A stretch of DNA of 64,000 nt from Piromyces finnis finn (Eukaryota > Fungi > Neocallimastigomycota). The notes below the pieces were generated by a model, which was given only the letters and a program-made list of their open reading frames with translations, did not search any database and was not told the origin of the DNA. The stretch spans positions 372,001 to 436,000 of the forward strand of contig MCFH01000016.1 in assembly GCA_002104945.1 (NCBI GenBank), read 5' to 3'. Positions 39,663-55,642 of the stretch are shown one piece after another. How positions within the stretch are numbered: position 1 is the first letter of the stretch; each line of letters begins with the position of its first letter. The position numbers and the translations under genes are program-made.

Positions 39663-40053
39663 TTTTACACTTTTTCTCTATATTAACTTGTTTCTAATAT
39701 TTAATCCTTTACATTTTAAAATGAAAATACATATAATTATTATACATTTTATTTTTATTTTTATTTTTTTTAATTTGTAAAAGATGAATGATTAATTTAA
39801 ATTAAAATCATTAATATATAATTTAACAGGAAACACGTGATATGAAATAAAAGTTTTATACAAATATATTAAATTTACATTTCTGATATATTATATTTAT
39901 ATCTTTTTTATACTGTATTTATTGCTGTTTTTTTTTTTGTTGTTGTTGTTGTTGTTTTTATTTTTTTGTACTGTAGTTGATGTTTATTTGCAATTAAATA
40001 CTATCTTCAAAATAAAGAAAAATTGTATTTGAAATTCCTTCAATCACTTTTAA

Positions 40054-41460
<1,407 letters not shown>

Positions 41461-41865
41461 ATCCCTTTTAACCACATAGAAATAAATAATATTTTTTTTT
41501 TTTTTTAACGGCATCAAATATTTTTAAACTTTATTATTAATTTAATTAAAATTATAATACATGTAATATAAAAAATTAAAAATAAAAATAAAAAAATATG
41601 TTTCAATAAACACAAATGAATAAAAATTGGGTATAATGTATTCTAGTAATTTTAATTAAAGTAAGAAAACCACTATTATACTAAAGTATAATGATTGTAT
41701 TTGACTTTCCAATGAGACACCGAGCCAAAGATCAGAATTTTATCATGGGACAAAATTATTATCTCCATTGGTTGCGCTGGCCCTCCTGGCCTGTCTTACT
41801 GTTTCTTCAGCATTGACGTTCTTGAATGTTGCTTCAAACCTTTTGAGCATTGACCATTGCTGACC

Positions 41866-41876
41866 AATAGCAAAAG
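41866..41876. repeat. Left copy of the 11-bp target-site duplication AATAGCAAAAG flanking element B
   Basis: Identical to 47748-47758; followed by gca and T16 (41880-41895), the poly(A) of B. Confidence 0.85.
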
Positions 41877-41949
41877 GCATTTTTTTTTTTTTTTTAGACT
41901 AGGAAGAGAATACACATCTTTTATTTATTTACTTATTTAATTAGTGATA

Positions 41950-44900
41950 TTACATAATATTAGGTGATAATACATATTGATAATGATATAATAAATAATA
42001 AATAAAAATAATAAAATATATATAAATAAAAATATAAATATAAAAAAATATAAAATAATTATTTAAGTTGCATAAAAGTTCAATGAACTCTGCAATTTGT
42101 ACTGTGTGGGATTGGTCCCTACCTAATAAATTAAATGAAATAAAAAAAAGAAGTAACATCAGGTATGATAGTGTGGTGTCCACTAAACTCTCCCATGAGT
42201 TCATAATGTTTTCATTCGAATTTGAGGAAATACTAACATTGAACCTTGTGTACGGAACACTGAGAATGTTCCTTTGCCATATTGGTACGACGTCGGCGCT
42301 CTTGATTACGTTAGGTGTCTTACTAAACCTATCAAAAAGTAGCTTCATAGAGCTACTAATGATAGGGATTGTTTTAGTAAGAAAAGCCGCGAGACCCTCT
42401 ATATATGGAACATGAGACCCCGATGAACTGTAAAGCTGTTCATTCAAATGTCTTTGTTCCGCCTTATCGATTTGTAGCTCATCATAAGCTAAAGTTCCAC
42501 CAAGAAGGAACGTAAAAATATAGTTATAAATTGTTTTTCTTACTTCCGTTTCGGGGAGTAAGTATGTGATGAATTGATTCTTATATTTATTGTAAAAAAG
42601 GGTAAAAAGATCGTCAAGAAAGCTAAGTGAAGAAGCTCTGTATTCAGAGAATGCAGAACATTCTAATATCCAATGGTAAAAAGATTGTTCGTCATATCCG
42701 CAACATGGACAGACACGAGGGCAGTCAGGAGTAACTCTATTACTGGCAATAGCAATTCGGGTAGTATTTTCATAACCGCATCGAATACGAATAATCCAGG
42801 TAATTCCTAAATTTAAGTGAGGTTTGTTGAGACCGATATGCATTAGGCGATTTGAATTAAGGAATTTGTTGTTAGTATATCTGAGGGCTTTACTTCCATT
42901 ATTTAGGCTACTATTATTCCAATAATATTCTCTAATATCTTTAGTACTTTTAATATTTATTTTCATAAGCTTCTTATGTAGTGAACAAGATTCTTTGGCC
43001 CAAGAGTAATGAGACATGGGAAGAATAGATCGGACGAGATCTTTAATTATACAATTTGATTTTCTCCATTTAACAAAGCATTTCACTTGTTGCGCAGCAT
43101 AAATACCTGAAAGGGTAGGGATCCTCATATCTCTTGTAAGAGCATACAGACTAATAAATGAATTTCATTCAAAAACAAAATCTTTGTTATTAAAACTTTT
43201 ATTGTGAAAGCTATTGACACTCCATAAAACAGCAGTATTGATAAGAGATTGGACTCTTCTAGTTCTATTTTTGTTGGAACCAAGCAAAGGAGCATAATAA
43301 GAGACTTTGCTTAAAATATAAGAATGAATTACTATGTTTTTTAAGCCAATAGGAACACAATTGTTGGTGAGGAAGTTCTTAAAAGAGAATAAAGATTTCT
43401 GAACTTTTTTGTACATATTAGACAGAATAGGAGTCAAAGAAAGATCTTCGTCGAATGGGATTCCAAGATAAGTATAGCAAGAAACCTTTGGAATCGAGTA
43501 CATACCGATGTAAAATGTTGGGTCGACATAACTAGGGGATCTATTAAAGTTGATAGGTTTAACAACAATAGTTGCACATTTATTTATTCCAAAAGACATT
43601 TCATTTAAATTTGCCCAATCAAGGACTAGATTGAGCATCTTTTGAAGGTTCTTCTTACTAGGAGCAATCAAAACAATGTCATCAGCGAAAAGGCCACCAC
43701 AACAACGTTTATTACCTAAGCTAACTCCAAGCCTTTCACATTTATTTAAAATATCATTGATAAAGAGGTTAAACAGTATAGGAGAAAGAGGACATCCTTG
43801 TCTTACACCACGGTTTATAGGGAATTCATTGGAAAGCATATCCAAGAAACGTGCACGAGCTTTAGAGGTAGAGTAGAGATTATTGAGAAAATCAAAACAT
43901 TTACCACGTATACCTAATTTATATAACTTTGTAAGGATATTAAAAATAGGAACTGAGTCGTATGCTTTTTTAAGGTCTAGAAAGGCGACATAAGTGGCTT
44001 TTCCTTTAAATTTTCTTCTTTGACAGATTTCTCTAATGGAAATAAATAAGCTAATACATTCTTCTTTATTGCGAAAACCAAATTGCTCAGGTCTTATAAA
44101 ATTATGAGAAAGAGCATACTTTGAAATTCTATTAGTTACAATTTTTGAAATAATTTTAAGACCTACATTGATGAGAGAAATACCACTATAATTATTACAG
44201 TCTGAAAGATCGCCTTTCTTTGGAATAGAAACAATGGAAGCAGAGTTCCATTTCAAAGGAAAGGAACCATTCCAGATTTTATTAAAAATTAATTTAAGAC
44301 AATTTCCAGCAGACTTATGTTCTTTCTCCAGTTCTTCGTTACAAATGAAAGCTTTGAAAAATTCAATTGGGATACCATCGGGACCTGGAGCCTTGTTATT
44401 CTTCATTGACAGAACAACATTTCTAATTTCCTCAATAGAAATGGGACCATTTATATCCCATGCTATTTGAATTGGAAGGCTCTTTCCCAGTAACCACGAT
44501 TTAAGCTGTGATTTGTAACATCAGATGCAAGATTTTCATAATGTTCAGCCCAACATTTTAATTGTTCTTGAGGAGTAAATAAATCCTTGCCATTCTTGTC
44601 CTTAATAGTTGAAACATGGGAGGACGAATAACTTGGTTTGGCAAGTTTTTTAAGGCCTTTCCAACCTTGTCTAAAGCTTTTATCAATAAAATGTTTACCG
44701 ATAGAAACAATATTAGCTTTATAGAGATTGGATCTGAATTTGCTCTTAACCTTTTTGATGGTATTACATAGATTTTGGTATATGGAGAACTGGTTAAGAT
44801 AATTTTCCATGTCAGCGCAATCTGAAAGGGGCTTAATATTTTTGTAAGCCAGGTGTTTTTCATGTGATAAGTTTTTGATGTATTGAGGGCAATGGAATGC

Positions 44901-46336
44901 TGGACCTTTTAAATCTGCAGGCACAATGGCTTTTATTTCTTTACCTATAGTTTTGGAAGTATCTAAAAATCTTGAAACCATATCGTCAGCCGAAAGGCTA
45001 TCGCAATTAGCTTCAAGCTCGGAAGCTAGAACAGCAAAGCGATTACTAGTAAGAATGTCAGAACACTTTGTGTTACAGATATGACTTGACCACTTAAAGG
45101 TCTTCTTAGGCTTTTTGAAACCATCCAAAGAGTCATTTTTACAAGACACAAGGATCGGTTTGTGATCAGAAACATCGTGGAAAACTTCACAAACTGAAGA
45201 TTTGTTTATGTGTTCTGTCATAGCTTTGTTGTATATAATATGATCAATGCATGAAGATTTAGATCCTTTTTCCCAGGTAAAATTATTACCAGTTAACTCA
45301 GCCATAGTCCAATCCGGGAAGTGTTGTGATATATAAGATTTGATTTTAATAGCTGACATATTAAAGTCTCCTACAAGGATAGCTGGGTGGTTGAATTTGT
45401 TATGCGTTGTTAACCACTTATCAAGTTCATCAAAGGCAATTAATCTAGCATCCGGCCATCTAGTTTGCGGGAAGTAAATATTACCGATGGTACATCTCTG
45501 GTTCCAAAATGACAATATTGTAACTGAAATGATGTACTTGATGATTTAGTATAAATCTTAGATTTTGGGCCGTTTTAGCCAGACTTTTTAGCCAGAAGAA
45601 ATTTGACCTCAGGCAGAAGTTTAGCCAGGAAAATTTCCTTATATAGAAGAGGTTCAGGAGTAAAGGAACAAGAATTATGAACACCAATGTAAAGTCCTCT
45701 CATACCTGGAACTTTAGGATTAGCACGTCTGTGTACTGGTTTATAGTTCGGTAGGCATGGGGAGGAAATTGCATTACCACAGAGGAATTGGCTGTTACCT
45801 ACTTCTTGAAGACAGACACATACAGGTTTGAAAACAGAGATGAAGTATAAAACACCGTCCTTTTTCTCAGGGTTCCAACCATTGATGTTCCAACAAGTAC
45901 ATAAGTTGAAAAAGGAAGCATTAGAGCTTAAATGACTAAAATAGAAATCGTCAGAGAGTGGACCAGTAGTAGATTTGATAGATCGTTTGTTTTTGTATGA
46001 TCTATTGTTTTTGAGCTTATCAATGAATTTCCAAGATATTTTACTAGAGATTGGGAGTTTTTCAGAAAGTGAGTGTATAAGTAACATGGCTTTAAGCGGA
46101 CATTTTCCATTGACTTTTAGAATGAAATAGGTACCGAGTGATTGTGAATATTTTTTGGTGAGGGATTGAAGAATATCATTGAAAGGTTGAATGTCCTTTA
46201 AAAGAAATTCCATTAGTCGTTGTTTTGACCATGAACTAAGATCATGGATAAAAATTAGATATGATTTATTGGAGTTAGATCCGAAGAAACGAAGACCACG
46301 TCGTAAGGTAGGTACAGTACAATTGGTATTGTTCAT
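41950..46336 (-). pseudogene. Element B ORF (RRM-like N-terminus, APE endonuclease, RT, CCHC), disrupted
   Basis: Broken by a ~100-bp insertion at 45540-45640, a frameshift near 44470 (ERA/LPIQIAWDIN) and an in-frame TGA at 43165-43167. Confidence 0.85.
45540..45640. other. ~100-bp foreign insertion in the endonuclease domain of element B
   Basis: Removing it restores PEPLLY-K-YIISVTILSFWNQRCTIGNIY, collinear with KYIISIYTFSLWNRFKCSIGNVY of element C. It contains three copies of TTTAGCCAG. Confidence 0.7.
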
Positions 46337-47574
46337 TTTGAAAGAACTTATTAAGACAATAGATATTAATAATTTGAAGTATTGATATAATGATATAAAT
46401 AAGATAATGAAATAAAATATATAGTAAAATAAAAATAATAATAGTAAAGACGGATATATTATATAGCTAGTGGATTATTTGTCAAACAATATTTTAAATT
46501 TTATAACTGGAAAAGGGAAAAGTGGCTAAGTTGTTGACAAACTTAGTTCTAACTCTACTGAAGACTTTAAACGGGAAGATAAATTTTGAATATCTATCAC
46601 TTTGGATTTCTGTATTATAACTGTATTTTGAAAGCTCTTTATATTTATAAGAATTGTATAATTTATTGGATGATTATTGTATTGTGTTGATTCTGATTGT
46701 TGAAATTGAACATTCATTTAGGTTGTTTATGTTGTAAGGTAGAGAGATAATAAGAGTGAAAAGTTGTTATATCAAAAATAATGGAAAAAAAGTTGAAGAA
46801 TTTTGGGTAAACATAATAAATTTTTTTTTTTTTTAAAAGATAAAATTGAAACAAGAGTAGTATTTACAATATAAAAATAGAATACTCGATTTTCCAGGAT
46901 AGAAGCTTTGATAATAAAAATGTTAAAGAAAAAAAGGTGTTAATACTTACCATAATAGTCCATAATAAACCTAATTAAGTTATACAGATATATAAATATA
47001 CATATAATATAAAGTATAAGAAATATATATATATATAGAAAAGAGATAGAAAAAGTATACAAAAGAATGTTAGTAGAAAAGAGATTCCTTGGAAAATCTA
47101 GAGTTACAAAAAAATAAGAAATAAAAAAAGATATTACTAGAATCATATAAAATCATAAAGGAAAAATAAAAAAGCCGCGCCCCTCGAAAATAATAAAAAT
47201 AGAAAAAAAAATAAAAGATTAAATATGATTATGTAATGAAAGCCGCACCCCACACGAAACTCAAGAATAAATGAAAGGAATAACAAACTAACTGAAAAAA
47301 CAAAACTATCTGACTAATCAACATATAAAGAATAAAAAAGGAATAAAAGAACAAAGAGAATAAGTAGTAAACTGGGATAACAAATTATCGATGAAAGCTA
47401 AAATAAAAATGAAATCAAGAAATATTCAAAATCAGTATTTAATACTACCGAATCAAACAATTTTAAGTTTAAAATAATATGTTATAAAAGTTGTTAAAGC
47501 AACTACTAAAAAAATAAGTTGAAGGTGTAAGGGATATATGATATAACAACTAACACTCAAATTATCGACTCTGT

Positions 47575-47747
47575 TCGCTCAGTACCATGAGCTTAGTCCT
47601 AATAATATTTCCAAATAAAGACTAACCAAGCATCCATTGCGCAATACTTGGATTTAATTCTTTCTACTCTCTCAGTACCATGAGCATGAGTAGACCCCCT
47701 TGAGAAACTACATTTATTAAATAAATGAAGGCACGTACCCAAGTGGG
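47575..47747 (-). ncRNA. Structured 5' leader (module X) at the 5' terminus of element B
   Basis: 173 nt ending exactly at the TSD. Consecutive predicted hairpins: CAUUUAU/AUAAAUG, UCUACUC/GAGUAGA enclosing CUCA-UGGUAC-UGAG, CCAAGUAU/AUGCUUGG, UUAGUCU/GGACUAA and GCUCA-UGGUAC-UGAGC. Function is unknown. Confidence 0.6.
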
Positions 47748-47758
47748 AATAGCAAAAG
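47748..47758. repeat. Right copy of the 11-bp target-site duplication AATAGCAAAAG
   Basis: Identical to 41866-41876. Confidence 0.85.
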
Positions 47759-50700
47759 ACATGATTTTGGTTAGAAGTTCCGCGGTTACCGTCAAGAATG
47801 GTGTTCCTTCGTTAGTACCAGATTGAATCTGACGCTTACAAAGTTCTTTCCATTCCCTTGAATTGTAATTAATATTGTTAAAACTTCTTCCCCCAAGAAG
47901 GAATTATTATCTTCACTATTGCTATCATTACTAATATTATTATTTCTACTACTATTATTATTATTATTATTATTGTTATTATTACTATTGTTATTATTAC
48001 TATTGTTAATATTATTAGTACTATTGTTACTATTACTATTACTGTTATTGCTATCTCTGCTGACATTATCAATTTCATTATTATTGATAAGACTATTGGA
48101 ATTACGTTGACTGAAAAAATTTAATAGATGGACTATGGAATCATAATGTTTAATACGGATATCTCTAAATGTTGGACAATCTAATAACCAATGTTTAATA
48201 CTTTGAACACCACACTTGCAACATGGACAGTAGTTAGGACAAACTGGATCAACAAATTTAACAGCTTTGGCAACTCTAGCATCCAACTTGTATCCGCTTC
48301 TTGCTTTCAATAGCCAGTAGAAGCCATAGGCAAACTCTGGGTACTCATAACATAATTTAATAAAATCTTTAGTTTCAATAAATTTATTATCATCATAATA
48401 TTGCGCTTTGATTGAATTCCCTTTGAGATCTTTCCAATAAAAGTTTTTAACTGCTTTAACATCTCCATGTTTCTTTAATTTTTTATCAAGTGTCCTACTT
48501 GATTTGCACCACGTGTATTTTCTAAATTTAGGAATGTAATTGACAAGGTATGAGATAATACAATTTGAGTTTTTCCATTTGTTAAAACATCTAACCTGAG
48601 CTAAAGCACATTTGGCTGACAATGGAGGAATATTCAAATCTTTTGAGATAGAGTATAAAGATATAAACGATACAGCTTTATGAACTCCGGCAACCCATCG
48701 TATTCCTTTGTTAACATGCTTCTGAGCAATTCTAGACCTGGCTTTGTTGGATCCAAGTAATGGTGCAAAGTATGAAACTCTGCTAATCACTTGTGAGTTA
48801 AGTACTAGCTTTTTGAAGGGAATAGGAATATTAGGATTTCTTAAGAATTTACTGACTGAGAAAAGCCCTTTCAAAACCTTGTTATTAAGAGCTTTAATTA
48901 CTGGTTTAAGGGACAGATTCTTATCAAATGGAACACCAAGATAAGTATAACAATCAGTAGTTGGAATGGGTTGTCCTGCTAGTAAAATGTTGGATCTCTC
49001 TTGATCTGATTTTCTATTGATTCAGGACGAATCACCATCGTTGAACATTTCTGGATACCAAATTCCATTTCATTATACAAGGCCCATTCATTAACTCTTC
49101 TTAGCATCTTTTTTAAGCATCCTCTTGTTGGAGCACAAATAACTATATCATCTGCAAAAAGTCCACCACAGCATCGAGTGTCACCTAAACTGACTCCAAG
49201 ATCTTCGCACTCTTTAAATATATCATTAATAAAGAGATTAAAGAGAATAGGAGAAAGAGGGCAACCTTGACGGACTCCTTTCTTCACATCAAAAGATTTC
49301 GAGAACTGTCCATCTAATTTGACATTAGCCTTAGATGTTAAATATAAATTTTTGATGAATTGTAAACTCTTACCTCGGATTCCTAAACAATCTAATTTAT
49401 GGATAATATTACCGATTGGGACTGAATCGTATGCTTTCCTGAGATCTAAAAAGGCCAAATATGTCTCTTTATTATCTAATTGACGTCTACGGCATATTTC
49501 TTGGATTGAAATGAAAAGACTGATACTTTCTTCCTTTTTTCGAAAACCAAATTGTTCAGGTCTAATGAAATTATTCTTTAGACCATATTCTGAGATTCTA
49601 GTGGTGACAATTTTGGAAATCAACTTAATACCATTATTGATAAGTGATATACCTCGATAGTTATCACAATCTGTCAAATCTCCCTTCTTAGGAATAGAAA
49701 CAATACTGGATTCATTCCATGAGTTGGGGAAATCTCCATCCCAAATACGGTTGAATAATTTAAGAATAAAATTTAAACCATGAGCATCATTATCTGAAGT
49801 GGTATTACCGGAAGAATTATTATCTGTAGCATTATTAGAATCATTACTTGATGGAATTAATGCTTTGTAAAATTCAATTGGAATACCATCCGGACCTGAT
49901 GCTTTATAATTTGGAGTAGAGAGGATAGCTGACTTGACTTCATCAATACTAATATCTTGGTTGATATCCCACTCATCAAGCATAGGAAGTGAAAAACGTT
50001 TATTCATTGGTTCTTCATACCAATGCTCCAAATCAAGACTTACACCACTTGGATCTGATGCAAGGTTTTCGAAATGATCATGCCACACATCTAGTTGTTC
50101 TTCCGTAGCAACAACTAATTCTCCATTTTTATTTTTAATTGGTTGAGCAATAAAGAAAGAATATTTTCCAATTTTTGCAGTTTTCTTGATCCATTTCCAG
50201 GCCTTCTTAGGATTATGACTCTTCATATACTCACATTCTGTTTTAATCCAATGAAGATATTCTTGCTTCCTAAATTCATTACATCTTTTGTGGATGTATT
50301 CGATGAGCTTACGGTAGATTTTAATTCTTTTAATAAATTCATCTATATCATAAATTCTTTCTTTTTTAAATCTCTTATACAACTTCATTTTGATTTTTTG
50401 AAGATTAAAAATTTGTTGTGAAATATGAAATGAAGACTTTATAACATTATTTGCTGAGGTAATACTGAGCTCGTCTGCAATTGAAAAAGCAGTTGAAGTA
50501 AACTCTTTGGAAAGTTCATCTGTAGAAACATTAGGATCGTTGAATTTTGCTGAAAGTATTTGGAATTTATTATGACTGAGAATAGATTCCTTTTCCTCAA
50601 TACATTTTAATCTATTCCATTTCAGAATTTTCTTAGGAACATTAAAGTCAATAGAAAAATCATCCATAGGAATAATTTACCATTAATAAGAAGTGGCTTA

Positions 50701-52049
50701 TGGTCTGATACAGGATAAAAATTATTTATAAATGATCCTGAGTGAATAAGATCTTTCATCTTCGAATTGATAAGAGCATGGTCAATGTCGGAAGATTGAT
50801 CACCTCGAGTCCAAGAGATAGTAGACCCTCTAAGCGGAAGAATTTCCCAATCTCCTAATCCATTAGTTGATAACCAGTTGGATAATTTTACTTTAGACAT
50901 ATTAAAATCACCAACAAGAATCGATGGATGGGATGAATGAGTTTGTAACCACAAGCGAACTTCTAACTTTGCATGATCAACATAGATGTTGTGATGACTA
51001 TGAGGCATATAAACATTACCAATCGAGCATTTGAATCTATTCCAGAGACTAAAAGTATAAATAGAAATAATATACTTTCCAGAGAAGTTTTCAAGTGAGG
51101 CTTGACATGAATTGTGAAAACCTAAATATAAACCTCTCATTCCCGGAACTGATTCGTCAGCTTTCTTGAAAAAGTGTCTATAGTTTCGCAAAGTAACACG
51201 ACAAGGATAATCTGTATTCGATCCAGAACCATTACCAGTTTCTTGGAAACATAAAAATAATGGTTTGAAAATAGCTGTGAAATAGCTAATGCTATCTCTC
51301 TTTTCGTGATTCCACCCATTGGTGTTCCAACTAAGACAAAAAGAAAAGTTATCAGGCTTGTTGGATGAGGATGAGGAAGAATTGTTGCTATTATTACTAT
51401 TATTAAAGTCATCATTATTAATGGATGATGCATAAGAGGAATAAGTAGAACTATTACTAGATGGCTGTGAAACTGAAGAACTATCAACTATTGAACTGTT
51501 ATCAGAGTTGATAAAACTATTAGAATTAATTGTTGAATGTTGAGATTGAAATTGTGTTTGCTGTAGATCTGGAATATTTTCATGATGGGAAACTTGTTGA
51601 AGATCTTGTTGAAGATCGGATTGTTGATGAGATTGTTGAACTGATTGTTGAAATGATTGTTGAATAGAATGTTGATGTTTATTAGAAATTAAAATTTTAC
51701 GTTTGAGAGTGGAAAAAGTGTATTTGTGATTCCTTCTACTACGAGCTGAAAAGGAAATTGAGGTAACTGAAAGTTTCTTCTTTAACATGTGTAAGATTTT
51801 AATACAATCTTTTGATGAACCATGAACCTTGACTAAGAAAAAGTGATCATTGAAAGTCTGAAAATATTTAACACTAATAACTGAATTAAATTTATCTTCT
51901 AGAATAACCTCGAGTTTTTCCCATAGCATATTTACTGACCATGATCGAATACCACGGATAAAGAAGGAGCGAATATCATCTAAGGGGATACCATAAGACC
52001 GGGTACCACGTCTGATATAATTCTTGTCTTTAATATAAAGGACTGACAT
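47748..52049 (-). pseudogene. Element C ORF (RRM-like N-terminus, APE endonuclease, RT, CCHC), frameshifted
   Basis: Frameshifts near 50680 and 48980, plus an apparent deletion or frameshift near 47930 relative to A1. The C-terminus is cut off by element B. Confidence 0.85.
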
Positions 52050-52645
52050 GATAATAAATTCTAATTAAAAATATTGAATATAAAATAAATACTAATAAAA
52101 ATTATAAATATAACGTATATGGAAAAAAAAATCTGTCTCTCTCTCTCTTCTTAAAAGTACTGGATAGTACAAAAATTGTTACGATGCTTTGTTTAAAGTT
52201 TCTTTTTTTTGAATTCTAGTTGTAAATTTTCTTTAAAAATTCTAGTTTTGGTTTGTTGTTAGTAAATTCGAATCGCTTTTTGACACTAAACTTGTTTGAC
52301 TTTACTTTTCATTAAATATTTAAATTGGTAAAAAATTTGAATCAAGAATGTCGACACCAGAAAGCTTGTGAATAGTATTTTTACATGATGTAGAGTGAAT
52401 CAGTCTCTTACAAGAAACAATACAACAATAGCTACATGAATATAAAAATACAATGCAAATGCTAAAGTTGACTACATTGGATTCTTACAAGAGAAGAGTA
52501 GTACTACATGAATACATGAATAAAAGAAAAAATACAGCAACAAAATGTATTACTCTTCTAATTAAATACTATACAAACTTACCTGAATATCAAACATTCA
52601 ACTTATTCATCAAATACTCAATTCGATGAATAAAATGTTTTTTAA

Positions 52646-52938
52646 TCGCTCAGTACCATGAGCTTAGTCCTAATAATTTTCCCTTAAGACTAACCAAGCA
52701 TCCATTGCGCAATGCTTGGATTTAATTCTTTCTACTCTCTCAGTACCATGAGCATGAGTAGACCCCCTTGATAAACTCCATTATTAAATAAATGAAGGCA
52801 CGTTCCTAAGAGGGCACCAAGCATCCATTGCGCAATACTTGGATTTAATTCTTTCTACTCTCTCAGTACCATGAGCATGAGTAGACCCCCTTGAGAAACT
52901 ACATTTATTAAATAAATGAAGGCACGTTCCCAAGAGGG
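52646..52938 (-). ncRNA. Module X at the putative 5' terminus of element C, with a ~122-bp tandem duplication of its 5' part
   Basis: Near-identical to 47575-47747. The units 52694-52814 and 52817-52938 are tandem copies separated by 2 nt. Confidence 0.6.
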
Positions 52939-52998
52939 AATTTATGGATAATATTACCGATTGGGACTGAATCGTATGCTTTCATGAGATCTAAAAAG
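52939..52998 (-). mobile_element. 60-bp C-family reverse transcriptase fragment abutting the 5' end of C
   Basis: Matches 49394-49453 (FLDLRKAYDSVPIGNIIHK region) with one mismatch. Confidence 0.85.
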
Positions 52999-53890: not shown

Positions 53891-55642
53891 TTAGTTTTCT
53901 TCATCGTCAACTATATCAATACTAACTTCTTTTTCTAAAGTCTTTTGTGGCTTTGATGGAATATTAGCAACATTTTCATTATTAACTTCTTTTTGTTCCT
54001 TCTTGGAAAGACTACGCTTAATATTTTCACTAGTAGCATTCATTCCACGCTTAATATTTTCGCCAGTTGCACTCATTCCGCGTTTAATATTTTCAAAGGA
54101 TGCTGGAGAAACTTTCTTTAATGCAAAACCACCAACACAGAGAATAGCAGCAGCACCAATTACACTACCAGTACCAATAATTCCAACAGAATTGCTCTTA
54201 TTTGCTTCTTCAATAGAAGCGTTAACATTTTGTTCTTGTTGAGCAAGAGCTTCTTTTTTCTTCTTAAGAATTTCAGCTTCTTTTACAAGAGCATCTTGTT
54301 CTTTAGTTTTGGCAACTTCTTCTCTAATAATAGCATTTTGTTCTCTTTGGATAGCTTCTTGTTGTCTTCTAAGAGCTTCCTTTTCTGATTGCTTAATTTC
54401 TTCTTCTCTTAATTTAGCATCTTCTTCATTGTTTTGCTTTCTAAATTCTTCAGCAAGTGTTTCCTTTTCTTTTTTAATTTCTTCTAAGTTTTTAATAGCA
54501 TTTTTTCTTTCGGTTTCAGCTTCTTCAGCTTCCATTTTAGCATCTTTTTGTTCTTGTCTATATTTCTCAATTTCTTGCTTAACAATTTTCTCTTCAGCAT
54601 CAATATAAATTAAATATTCATTACTAGATATGTCAGTTGGAATTTCATTATAATATTCAGTTTCATATAATGTAACTGTTTCAGTTTCAGTTATAGAATC
54701 TGAAGTAGTTTTGAAAGTTAATTCATTATTTTCACTTGGTTCCTTAATTTCTTCTTCTCTAGTAATAGTTTGTTGTTGAGTGGTAGTTGGTTGTTGAGAA
54801 GTGGTAGTAGTGGTTGATTGTTGAGAATTAGTAGTTGGTCTTTGAGTGGTAGTTGGTTGTTGAGAAGTGGTAGTAGTGGTTGGTTGTTGAGAAGTAGTAG
54901 TTGGTCTTTGAGTGGTAGTTGGTTGTTGAGAAGTAGTAGTTGGTCTTTGAGTGGTAGTAGTAGTAGTGGTGGTGGTGGTAGTAGTGGTAGTAGTGGTAGT
55001 TGGTCTTTGAGTAGTGGTAGTGGTAGTTGGTCTTCTAGTAGTAGTAGTGGTGGTGGTGGTAGTTGTTGATTTTCTGGTAGTGGTGGTTGTTTTTCTTTGT
55101 GTTGTTGCTACATTAATCTCAGCATCATTATTTGGAACATACATATTAACTGAAGAACTGGGTTTTGAATCGCTACTTTGAACATTGTCTTTAATTTCAA
55201 GACTACAAGCTTCACTGCTAGATATAGTTATTAAACTATCACAACTAACGGATTCCCAAGTAACATCGACAACACCAAGATTTGGATCGGCGATTTTCTT
55301 GAAAAGTGGAAGACTTACATCAATAGCACCTTCAGCACAAGATGGGCATTTATCAATAACTCTACCAATAATACTTTTACCTTCGTGTGTAACTTTAATA
55401 CAAGTATTACAAATTTGAGCTGAATTTGGATTGGCTGCATTTGTAAGAGTTCTATCATATTGAACATAATTCATAGCAACATAATATTGAGTATTAAAAT
55501 TAACAAGACCACAAGCTGGAATTGCCATATCTGATGGACAATCTTCAGCATTACCATAGTAAGTCATTCTACCTCTTCCACTAATAGCGAAAGCACCAGC
55601 TACACTTGTAGCTAATAAAGATAAAGTATTGTATAATTTCAT
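53891..55642 (-). CDS. Expansin/loosenin-like DPBB (RlpA-like) protein: signal peptide, DPBB, Thr-rich stalk, coiled coil, TM and cytoplasmic tail
   Basis: MKLYNTLSLLATSVAGAFA signal peptide; GRMTYY..PACG..YYVAMN..ICNTCIKV..VIDKCPSC..GAIDVS..F..IAD..GVVDVTW; TM GIIGTGSVIGAAAILCVGGFAL. Single exon, 583 aa. Confidence 0.87.
   Translation of the reverse strand: MKLYNTLSLLATSVAGAFAISGRGRMTYYGNAEDCPSDMAIPACGLVNFNTQYYVAMNYVQYDRTLTNAANPNSAQICNTCIKVTHEGKSIIGRVIDKCPSCAEGAIDVSLPLFKKIADPNLGVVDVTWESVSCDSLITISSSEACSLEIKDNVQSSDSKPSSSVNMYVPNNDAEINVATTQRKTTTTTRKSTTTTTTTTTTRRPTTTTTTQRPTTTTTTTTTTTTTTTTTQRPTTTSQQPTTTQRPTTTSQQPTTTTTSQQPTTTQRPTTNSQQSTTTTTSQQPTTTQQQTITREEEIKEPSENNELTFKTTSDSITETETVTLYETEYYNEIPTDISSNEYLIYIDAEEKIVKQEIEKYRQEQKDAKMEAEEAETERKNAIKNLEEIKKEKETLAEEFRKQNNEEDAKLREEEIKQSEKEALRRQQEAIQREQNAIIREEVAKTKEQDALVKEAEILKKKKEALAQQEQNVNASIEEANKSNSVGIIGTGSVIGAAAILCVGGFALKKVSPASFENIKRGMSATGENIKRGMNATSENIKRSLSKKEQKEVNNENVANIPSKPQKTLEKEVSIDIVDDEEN
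54010..54100 (-). repeat. 33-bp (11-aa) coding repeat, three copies, in the cytoplasmic tail
   Basis: ENIKRGMSATG / ENIKRGMNATS / ENIKRSLS; cg(c/t)ttaatattttc at 54015, 54048 and 54081. Confidence 0.9.

What the first reader, a model, noticed from the sequence alone, without database searches (positions are those of the whole stretch)
47575..47747. Two divergent LINE families share a near-identical, highly structured 5'-terminal RNA module
The 173-nt module X forms the exact 5' end of B, inside the TSD, so it moved with B. It reappears almost unchanged at the 5' end of C (52646-52938). Homology starts at the same CCC and stops at the base of the last hairpin, while the rest of the UTRs look unrelated and the proteins are clearly divergent. 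On the element's sense strand it folds into about five consecutive stems. Variant positions give G-U wobbles on that strand (CCAAGU/GCUUGG, UUAGUCU/GGACUAA) but mismatches on the other, which supports an RNA-level function. I could not fit it to HDV, hammerhead, twister or pistol ribozymes, or to snRNA, tRNA or 5S. It may be an exchangeable leader (internal promoter, new self-cleaving or translation element, packaging signal) or a small RNA captured by template switching.
Basis: partly seen in the sequence, partly recalled or inferred. Interest (0 to 1): 0.82.

Follow-up and report, generated by a model that had tools for sequence, protein, structure and literature searches.

The report
Borrowed folded RNA head on LINE
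Two different jumping genes (LINEs) of an anaerobic gut fungus start with the same folded RNA "head"; the fold is real and uncatalogued, and one element has clearly borrowed its head from the other, much as mouse L1 elements swap promoter units.

Summary
On the minus strand, LINE "B" (47747->41880, poly(A), 14-bp target duplication) sits inside LINE "C" (52938->47748 plus 41865->41492). B starts, at its first base inside the duplication, with a 173-nt module that is 98% (first 123 nt) and 92% (all 173 nt) identical to C's 5' end. Elsewhere the elements differ strongly: RT 61% aa, endonuclease 40-46%, first 140 aa unalignable, UTRs unrelated.

The module is one 123-nt monomer plus a 50-nt tail; C has two monomers. 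Related gut-fungal LINEs carry the same monomer fold at their exact 5' ends with only 42-56% sequence identity. It has three stem domains plus a likely pseudoknot: 90.8% of cells pair against 41-46% in slid controls, and 23 of 34 pairs change on both sides. No Rfam family matches.

An RT tree puts B and C in separate clades. B's clade-mates carry a different monomer type, so B acquired C's leader recently, through a chimeric transcript or a template switch.

What the fold does is untested. Most likely it is a leader acting on its own RNA that doubles as a promoter monomer. Nothing supports self-cleavage.

This scan had already found the 124-nt monomer fold elsewhere in this genome; only the transfer between clades is new here.

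The parts
47575..47747 (-). Module X, the 5' leader of element B: one monomer plus a tail
   Evidence: It starts at the first base inside the target duplication.
47625..47747 (-). 123-nt structured monomer of B (P1 with inner hairpin, P2/P2b with loop UGGUAC, P3 with loop UUGCGCAAUG, and a J1 x L2b pseudoknot)
   Evidence: CM hit of 155.5 bits. Covariation. Independent folds.
47575..47624 (-). 50-nt tail (stems 4 and 5). Stem 5 repeats the P2b hairpin, so the tail looks like a degenerate partial monomer.
   Evidence: (partial model match at 47576-47596). Not conserved in relatives.
41880..47747 (-). LINE B: an L1-like, B-clade element. The single ORF is broken by two frameshifts and one in-frame stop. 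16-nt poly(A).
47748..47761 (-). Target-site duplication, 5' copy (tgtcttttgctatt on the sense strand)
41866..41879 (-). Target-site duplication, 3' copy (tgccttttgctatt)
52816..52938 (-). First monomer of LINE C, 98.4% identical to B's monomer
52693..52814 (-). Second monomer of LINE C. It is separated from the first by one extra G at 52815, which gives the 124-nt period. It has two broken pairs in P1.
52646..52692 (-). Tail of C's leader, homologous to B's tail
47748..52938 (-). LINE C, 5' part: a high-copy C-clade family. This copy has two 1-nt deletions relative to other copies.
41492..41865 (-). LINE C, 3' UTR and poly(A), separated from the rest of C by the insertion of B
52939..52998 (-). 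60-bp copy of C's internal RT region (49394-49453), joined directly to C's first base
   Evidence: 98% identity
40053..41457 (-). C', a 5'-truncated copy of the C family lying 33 nt downstream of C's poly(A)

Best explanation
Module X is the native 5' leader of an abundant L1-like LINE lineage (the C clade) of an anaerobic gut fungus. It consists of a 123/124-nt monomer, present in one to several tandem copies, followed by a degenerate partial unit.

The monomer's RNA adopts a conserved three-domain fold:
- P1, a terminal stem that encloses an ACGU-containing internal loop and a variable hairpin.
- P2/P2b, capped by a UGGUAC loop.
- P3, capped by a UUGCNCAAUG loop.
- A likely pseudoknot between the P1 internal loop and the P2b loop.

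This fold is maintained by compensatory changes in LINEs whose leaders are only 42-56% identical. That part is shown.

Element B belongs to a different clade, whose other members carry their own monomer type, so B obtained C's leader recently as a block of 173 nt. That follows from the tree and the identities. How it happened is inferred. Either a leaderless B copy landed in or just behind a C leader and was transcribed from it as a chimeric RNA, or the reverse transcriptase switched from B RNA to the leader of an abundant C RNA before integration.

The function is also inferred. The leader most likely works in cis in two ways. As DNA it would be the repeat unit of an internal promoter that travels with the element, like mouse L1 monomers or trypanosomatid Pr77. 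As RNA it would be a folded 5' end recognised by the retrotransposition machinery or protecting the 5' terminus.
For: - Placement inside the target duplication, and the empty site in other C copies.
- Module identity of 98.4% and 92.5%, against RT 61%, endonuclease 40-46% and an unalignable N-terminus.
- RT tree: B groups with P0017, P0018 and L136/L151 (support 96/92); C groups with L121, L122, L123 and L134 (93/97). Neocallimastix lanati carries both clades.
- B-clade relatives L150 and L151 start with a different monomer type. L150's is 42% identical to X and has a P2 of ACUAUCA/UGAUAGU.
- Homologous monomers lie at the exact 5' ends of relatives L123, L125-type, L133 and L150.
- Covariation: 90.8% of cells paired against 41-46% when partners are slid; 23 of 34 pairs change on both sides; 0 of 500 shuffles reach the observed values.
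- Pseudoknot: 91.7% paired, with a correlated one-base insertion on both sides in three sequences.
- Independent single-sequence folds give the same architecture in five of eight sequences, partly in two and weakly in L151.
- Monomer number varies: one in B, two in C, and one in another C copy that ends at 52814.
- C-family sequence including the leader appears in contigs of a metatranscriptome.
- Mouse L1 elements with promoter types mismatched through recombination are documented in PMC6454616.
Against: - Only one B copy could be examined. Its ORF is broken and its UTR is low-copy in the read data, so lineage-level sharing is unproven.
- No promoter, transcription-start or protein-binding data exist.
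- The covariation alignment was fitted to the model structure, and only 9 distinct sequences were available.
- The G-U excess on the sense strand is modest, 21 against 9, and the antisense strand folds equally well.
- B's N-terminal domain is unrelated to C's. If the leader were read by that domain, a swapped leader should not work.
Confidence: 0.72

Rival explanations
1. The insertion is a one-off, dead-on-arrival chimera. During this single integration the reverse transcriptase jumped from a B RNA to a C RNA leader, so there is no B lineage with this leader and no functional exchange.
For: B is defective and low-copy. A 60-bp internal C fragment is fused to C's own 5' end, which shows that template jumps happen at these 5' ends. 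B's UTR behind X is about 500 nt longer than the whole UTR of its relatives and has no native monomer.
Against: Contigs from independent runs carry the B-UTR/X junction with small differences at 47509 and 47573. That could mean a second copy, or only a strain allele. This rival is a variant of the main explanation, not an alternative to the transfer itself.
Confidence: 0.35
2. The monomer is a self-cleaving ribozyme that cuts at its own 5' edge and so defines the element's 5' end from read-through transcripts, as HDV-like ribozymes do in R2, RTE and L1Tc.
For: The element's 5' ends coincide exactly with the monomer's first base in every family. The fold is compact and probably pseudoknotted.
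Against: No Rfam ribozyme model matches, even at E<=10 on X or E<=1 on relatives. The strand order does not fit the HDV nested double pseudoknot: the partner of the 5' internal loop lies in a hairpin loop, not after P4. No hammerhead core is present. Tandem arrays of intact monomers pass through RNA, which efficient cleavage at each unit would prevent. Earlier follow-ups in this scan also report no sign of cleavage; I did not test that here.
Confidence: 0.08
3. The module is only a DNA-level promoter made of palindromic transcription-factor sites, and the RNA hairpins are a by-product.
For: The best-conserved unpaired motifs are DNA palindromes: ACGT, GGTAC(C) and ATTGCGCAAT. From memory, the last is the C/EBP-type bZIP consensus. 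Both strands fold equally well. The tandem monomer organisation resembles mouse L1 promoters.
Against: Transcription-factor sites do not explain 23 stem pairs with compensatory double changes lying outside the conserved motifs, or the G-U excess on the sense strand.
Confidence: 0.08
4. The module is a cellular small RNA captured at LINE 5' ends by template switching, as in U6-L1 chimeras.
For: The module forms a discrete block with sharp borders.
Against: Homologous monomers are the regular 5' ends of many related LINEs across genera and diverge along with them. The only three copies in the 64-kb window all lie at LINE 5' ends. No snRNA, tRNA, 5S or snoRNA model reaches significance.
Confidence: 0.03
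5. The near-identity reflects common descent with extreme purifying selection, or gene conversion between the two neighbouring elements.
For: B lies only 5 kb from C's leader, on the same strand.
Against: B-clade relatives have monomers only about 42% identical to X. Variable hairpin and loop positions are also identical between B and C. There is no flanking homology that could drive conversion.
Confidence: 0.04

Closest known systems
Mouse L1Md 5' UTR monomers (A, Tf and Gf types)
   Same: Tandem units of variable number form the exact 5' end of an L1-type LINE, followed by a partial unit. Elements carrying a promoter type that does not match their body arise by recombination (PMC6454616).
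   Different: The units here are 123/124 nt, not about 200 bp. There is no sequence similarity. The unit carries a covariation-supported RNA fold with a pseudoknot, which as far as I know (from memory) has not been reported for mouse monomers. Promoter activity is untested here.
Pr77 hallmark / L1TcRz of trypanosomatid retroelements
   Same: A short 5'-terminal module is shared by different retroelement families of one group of organisms. Pr77 acts both as an internal promoter (DNA) and as a folded RNA (abstracts listed: PMC3383444, PMC4035085, PMC8190864).
   Different: Pr77 is 77 nt, is not tandemly repeated, and folds as an HDV-like ribozyme. The fungal monomer does not fit the HDV topology and no ribozyme model matches it.
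R2 5' RNA pseudoknot / HDV-like ribozyme
   Same: A conserved pseudoknotted RNA sits at the 5' end of a non-LTR element. From memory, the R2 version is bound by the element's protein.
   Different: The topology differs, the LINE clade differs (R2 has a restriction-like endonuclease; these elements have APE), and there are no tandem repeats.
U6-L1 and other template-switch chimeras; end-to-end template jumping by non-LTR reverse transcriptases
   Same: A foreign RNA segment is joined to the 5' side of a LINE cDNA within one target duplication. Extra copied sequence is found at 5' junctions, such as the 60-bp RT fragment here.
   Different: The added segment here is the leader of another LINE, not a cellular small RNA, and it restores a complete LINE-type 5' end.

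Membership tests
L1-like (APE-type) non-LTR retrotransposon, for elements B and C | An APE endonuclease followed by a reverse transcriptase in one sense-strand reading frame, with poly(A) and a target-site duplication | tested here: met
   Pfam Exo_endo_phos and RVT_1 hit both elements. Poly(A) and a 14-bp duplication are present for B. The nearest named relatives are annotated as LINE-1 or TX1-like RT.
LINE promoter monomer arrays (mouse L1Md type) | Tandem head-to-tail units of variable number at the exact 5' end, ending in a partial unit | tested here: met
   B has one unit and C has two, with a 124-nt period. Another C copy starts at 52814 with one unit. The tail contains a partial unit.
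LINE promoter monomer arrays (mouse L1Md type) | The units drive transcription that starts within or at the array | not testable with these tools
   Only assembled contigs were available for the RNA runs, so no read starts could be seen.
HDV-like self-cleaving ribozyme | A nested double pseudoknot (P1, P1.1, P2, P3, P4) in which P2 is closed by the strand 3' of P4 and a catalytic C lies in J4/2; a match to the Rfam models | tested here: not met
   No Rfam hit at E<=10 on X or E<=1 on relatives. The covarying helices place the partner of the 5' internal loop inside the P2b hairpin loop, which is a different topology.
Hammerhead, twister, pistol and hatchet ribozymes | Match to the family covariance model or conserved core | tested here: not met
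   No Rfam match at permissive thresholds. Reading the sequence, no CUGANGA...GAAA core is present.
Pr77-type shared 5' hallmark | The same 5'-terminal module on distinct retroelement families of one genome | tested here: met
   98.4% identical on a B-clade and a C-clade element, but only one B copy was seen.
Pr77-type shared 5' hallmark | Sequence or structure homology to Pr77/L1TcRz, and dual promoter and ribozyme activity | not tested
   No Pr77 sequence was compared here. Activity needs experiments.
Any Rfam 15 family (snRNA, tRNA, 5S, snoRNA and so on) | Score at or above the gathering threshold | tested here: not met
   Zero hits in the window. The only hit at E<=10 is SNORD124 on the opposite strand, at 17 bits against a threshold of 40. 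ARAGORN found no tRNA.

The most novel reading that the evidence does not exclude
The leader may be a transferable 5' cap module. The reverse transcriptase of these LINEs would habitually jump, at the end of first-strand synthesis, onto leader RNA, either a free monomer or leader fragment or the 5' part of another transcript. That would re-equip truncated or foreign cDNAs with a complete promoter-bearing 5' end. One mechanism would then explain the tandem monomers with their extra junction G, the 60-bp internal fragment fused to C's tip, and B's borrowed leader. It would be a previously undescribed way for LINEs to heal 5' truncation.
Probability: 0.1. Interest if true: 0.8.

Novelty: new variant of a known kind. 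Interest (0 to 1): 0.5.

Why it matters
LINEs lose their 5' ends at almost every insertion, so how a lineage keeps or regains a working 5' end is central to its survival. Here a leader that is both a tandem monomer and a covariation-supported, pseudoknotted RNA has moved as a block between two LINE clades in an early-diverging fungus. Promoter or leader swapping, known so far mainly from mammalian L1, therefore also occurs in fungi. The transfer also says something about function: a leader that can be exchanged should not depend on family-specific protein recognition. The fold itself is an uncatalogued RNA family that deserves a covariance model and 5'-end mapping.

Tried and rejected
- A metagenome scan with the 15-mer GCTCATGGTACTGAG returned 120 loci.
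- Two viral-contig scans with 19-20-mers found nothing.
- B-like contigs L136-L146 did not reach a 5' end.
- L147-L149 have only a reverse-oriented L125-type monomer next to the B-like UTR, which is ambiguous.
- The L151 monomer is visible by eye and shares P2 with L150, but scored only 9 bits and was missed by the third model. It is therefore not in the covariation counts.
- MAFFT misaligned the middle domain, so CM-guided alignments were used instead.
- An alternative tertiary pairing between the P1 internal loop and the P3 loop was rejected. The change from X type to L123 type breaks one of its pairs, whereas pairing with the P2b loop is kept.
- Stems 4-5 of the tail were not recovered in relatives.
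- No second, native monomer was found in B's UTR with filters off.
- RNA runs were available only as contigs, so transcript starts could not be read.

Full report
**Layout of the locus**

All relevant elements lie on the minus strand. Self-BLAST, direct reading, ORF listing and Pfam give the following picture.
- LINE C runs 52938->47748 and continues at 41865->41492, ending in a 15-nt poly(A).
- LINE B (47747->41880, 16-nt poly(A)) interrupts C. It is flanked by a 14-bp target duplication, tgtcttttgctatt / tgccttttgctatt.
- Contigs from four public runs continue from 47748 directly into C's 3' UTR (loose ends). Other C copies therefore lack B, which confirms the nesting.
- A third copy, the 5'-truncated C-family element C' (41457->~40053), follows 33 nt after C's poly(A).
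- B and C each encode an N-terminal region, an APE endonuclease, a reverse transcriptase and a C-terminal region.
- B's frame is broken by two frameshifts and one in-frame stop.
- C has two 1-nt deletions relative to other copies (table 4).
- The depth figures suggest that C is a high-copy family, tens of times the depth of B's UTR, and that B is low-copy.

**The observation**

X (47575-47747) recurs only at C's 5' end: 52646-52814 (92.5% over 173 nt) and 52816-52938 (98.4% over the first 123 nt). X begins at the first base inside B's target duplication, so it was part of the integrated cDNA. Homology begins at the same CCC in both elements and stops after ...CUGAGCGA. The remaining UTRs are unrelated. 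The proteins differ strongly: RT 61%, endonuclease 40-46%, C-terminal part 36%, and the first ~140 aa are unalignable.

**Anatomy of the module**

X is composite. Positions 1-123 form a monomer. C has two monomers separated by a single extra G at 52815, giving a 124-nt period. Another C copy in the read data starts at 52814 with one monomer. Positions 124-173 form a tail with two predicted hairpins. The second, GCUCA-UGGUAC-UGAGC, repeats the inner hairpin of the monomer's second domain, so the tail looks like a degenerate partial unit.

The sense strand folds at -49 kcal/mol (z -2.9). The antisense strand is equally unusual (z -3.4).

**Relatives**

Word-based protein searches found only gut-fungal relatives: metagenome contigs, Anaeromyces robustus, Piromyces sp. 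E2, Neocallimastix lanati and Orpinomyces. More distant hits were L1/TX1-like RTs. Scan notes name the organism Piromyces finnis; I did not verify that.

Fetching the encoding contigs gave several full 5' ends. Each begins, directly after unrelated flank, with a C-rich start and a unit of about 110 nt with the same architecture:
- L123:434-543
- L133:723-614
- L133:914-1021
- L125:1001-1108 and its near-identical copies
- L147:4326-4217
- L150:3516-3623
- L151 from about 9101, recognised by eye

These units are only 42-56% identical to X.

**Is the fold real?**

A covariance model built from the three window monomers found the relatives, and two further rounds refined the model. On the resulting alignment (9 distinct sequences, 34 pairs), 90.8% of cells form standard pairs, against 41-46% when the partners are slid by 1-3 columns. 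Twenty-three pairs show changes on both sides, and none of 500 shuffles reaches the observed values. All 7 pairs of P2, all 4 of P2b and 6 of 9 in P3 have double changes.

A tertiary pairing between the P1 internal loop (G.UGCC / GUACC / GAUAC) and the P2b loop (GGUAC / GUAUC) is 91.7% paired. It is mostly invariant, but it is supported by a one-base insertion that occurs on both sides in the same three sequences.

Single-sequence folds made without any alignment give the same three domains in five of eight sequences, partly in two and weakly in L151. G-U cells outnumber A-C cells 21 to 9, which favours the sense RNA only modestly.

Two caveats apply. The alignment was fitted to the model structure, and the sample is small. 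The tail hairpins are not recovered in relatives.

**Comparison with known RNAs**

Rfam gives nothing at gathering thresholds. At E<=10 on X the only hit is a SNORD124 chance match on the other strand. Relatives give nothing at E<=1. ARAGORN finds no tRNA. The helix order does not fit the HDV-like nested double pseudoknot, and there is no hammerhead core. I therefore do not file the monomer under any ribozyme class.

**Was the leader shared by descent or transferred?**

A maximum-likelihood RT tree separates two clades.
- The C clade contains C, L121, L122, L123, L134 and a second N. lanati element (support 93/97).
- The B clade contains B, P0017, P0018 and L136/L151 (support 96/92).

N. lanati has both clades, so the split predates the genera.

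The two B-clade relatives whose 5' ends were recovered are L150, whose N-terminal domain is 54% identical to B's, and L151, whose RT is 69-70% identical to B's. Both carry their own monomer type. They share the P2 helix ACUAUCA/UGAUAGU, and L150's monomer is 42% identical to X.

B's leader is nevertheless 98.4% identical to C's, including the variable hairpin and the loops. Descent with selection cannot explain this. Gene conversion lacks flanking homology. The leader was transferred as a block.

**How the transfer happened**

The data do not decide this. Three routes fit:
- (a) A B copy landed in or just behind a C leader and was then transcribed from it as a chimeric RNA. Earlier scan notes report that these LINEs tend to land in the front repeats of resident copies; I did not test that.
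- (b) A template switch from B RNA to a C RNA leader took place during this or an ancestral integration.
- (c) Illegitimate DNA recombination.

The 60-bp internal RT fragment fused to C's first base shows that extra copying at 5' ends does occur. B's UTR behind X is about 500 nt longer than the entire UTR of L150 or L151 and contains no native monomer. Because B is defective and low-copy, a one-off chimera remains quite possible.

**Function**

Nothing here measures function. My best inference is a cis-acting leader with two layers.
- As DNA it would be the repeat unit of an internal promoter. The supporting points are its position at +1, its tandem and variable copy number, and the need of any LINE to carry its own promoter. 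The most conserved unpaired motifs are also palindromic (ACGT, GGTAC(C), ATTGCGCAAT), and from memory these resemble dimeric transcription-factor sites.
- As RNA it would be a compact 5'-terminal fold. This is required to explain the compensatory changes.

The fold seems to tolerate transfer to an element with an unrelated N-terminal domain. That argues, weakly, against family-specific recognition by that domain. Self-cleavage is possible but unsupported.

**Relation to earlier work**

Mismatched promoter types produced by recombination are documented for mouse L1 monomers (PMC6454616). A 5' hallmark shared by different retroelement families, with dual promoter and ribozyme roles, is documented for trypanosomatid Pr77. 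I found no paper on LINE leaders of anaerobic fungi.

Within this scan, the 124-nt monomer fold had already been found and followed up on other DNA of this genome (s1-182122, s1-182138, s1-182147), with the same conclusion that the fold is real and uncatalogued. My independent test agrees. The new element here is the cross-clade transfer.

**Verdict**

I class it as a new variant of a known kind, with moderate interest.

Noticed in passing
window 52939-52998: A 60-bp stretch is 98% identical to C's internal RT region (49394-49453), lies in the same orientation, and is fused directly to C's first base. It looks like a template jump after the reverse transcriptase reached the RNA's 5' end.
   Followed up: partly
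window 52815: A single extra G sits between C's two monomers and produces the 124-nt period. It could derive from a copied cap or a non-templated base at an end-to-end jump.
   Followed up: no
window 40053-41457: A 5'-truncated C-family copy (C') starts 33 nt after C's poly(A), so copies are stacked head-to-tail. It is about 88% identical to C.
   Followed up: partly
L147:4217-4326 (identical in L148 and L149): An L125-type monomer in reverse orientation abuts the 5' UTR of a B-like element. Its first 75 nt are 94% identical to the L133/L125 monomer, but its P3 domain differs. This may be a twin-priming-like inversion or a mosaic monomer.
   Followed up: partly
window 47625-47747, and relatives: The most conserved unpaired motifs are palindromes: ACGT in the P1 internal loop, GGTAC(C) in the P2b loop and ATTGCGCAAT in the P3 loop. 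L150 has AGUACU and L151 an AU palindrome at the P3 position. This may point to dimeric factor sites or to loop-loop kissing.
   Followed up: no
window 47170-47260: B's UTR contains two copies of a G+C-rich motif (GGGGYGCGGCTTT) within otherwise very AT-rich sequence.
   Followed up: no
window 53891-55642: A minus-strand ORF of 583 aa has a DPBB_1 (expansin / lytic transglycosylase-like) domain and an internal 21-nt-period repeat at 54758-55094.
   Followed up: no
L151:3933-4706 and L151:11344-12435: One Neocallimastix lanati contig carries RT genes of both the C clade and the B clade within 8 kb, next to duplicated GH5 cellulase genes.
   Followed up: no
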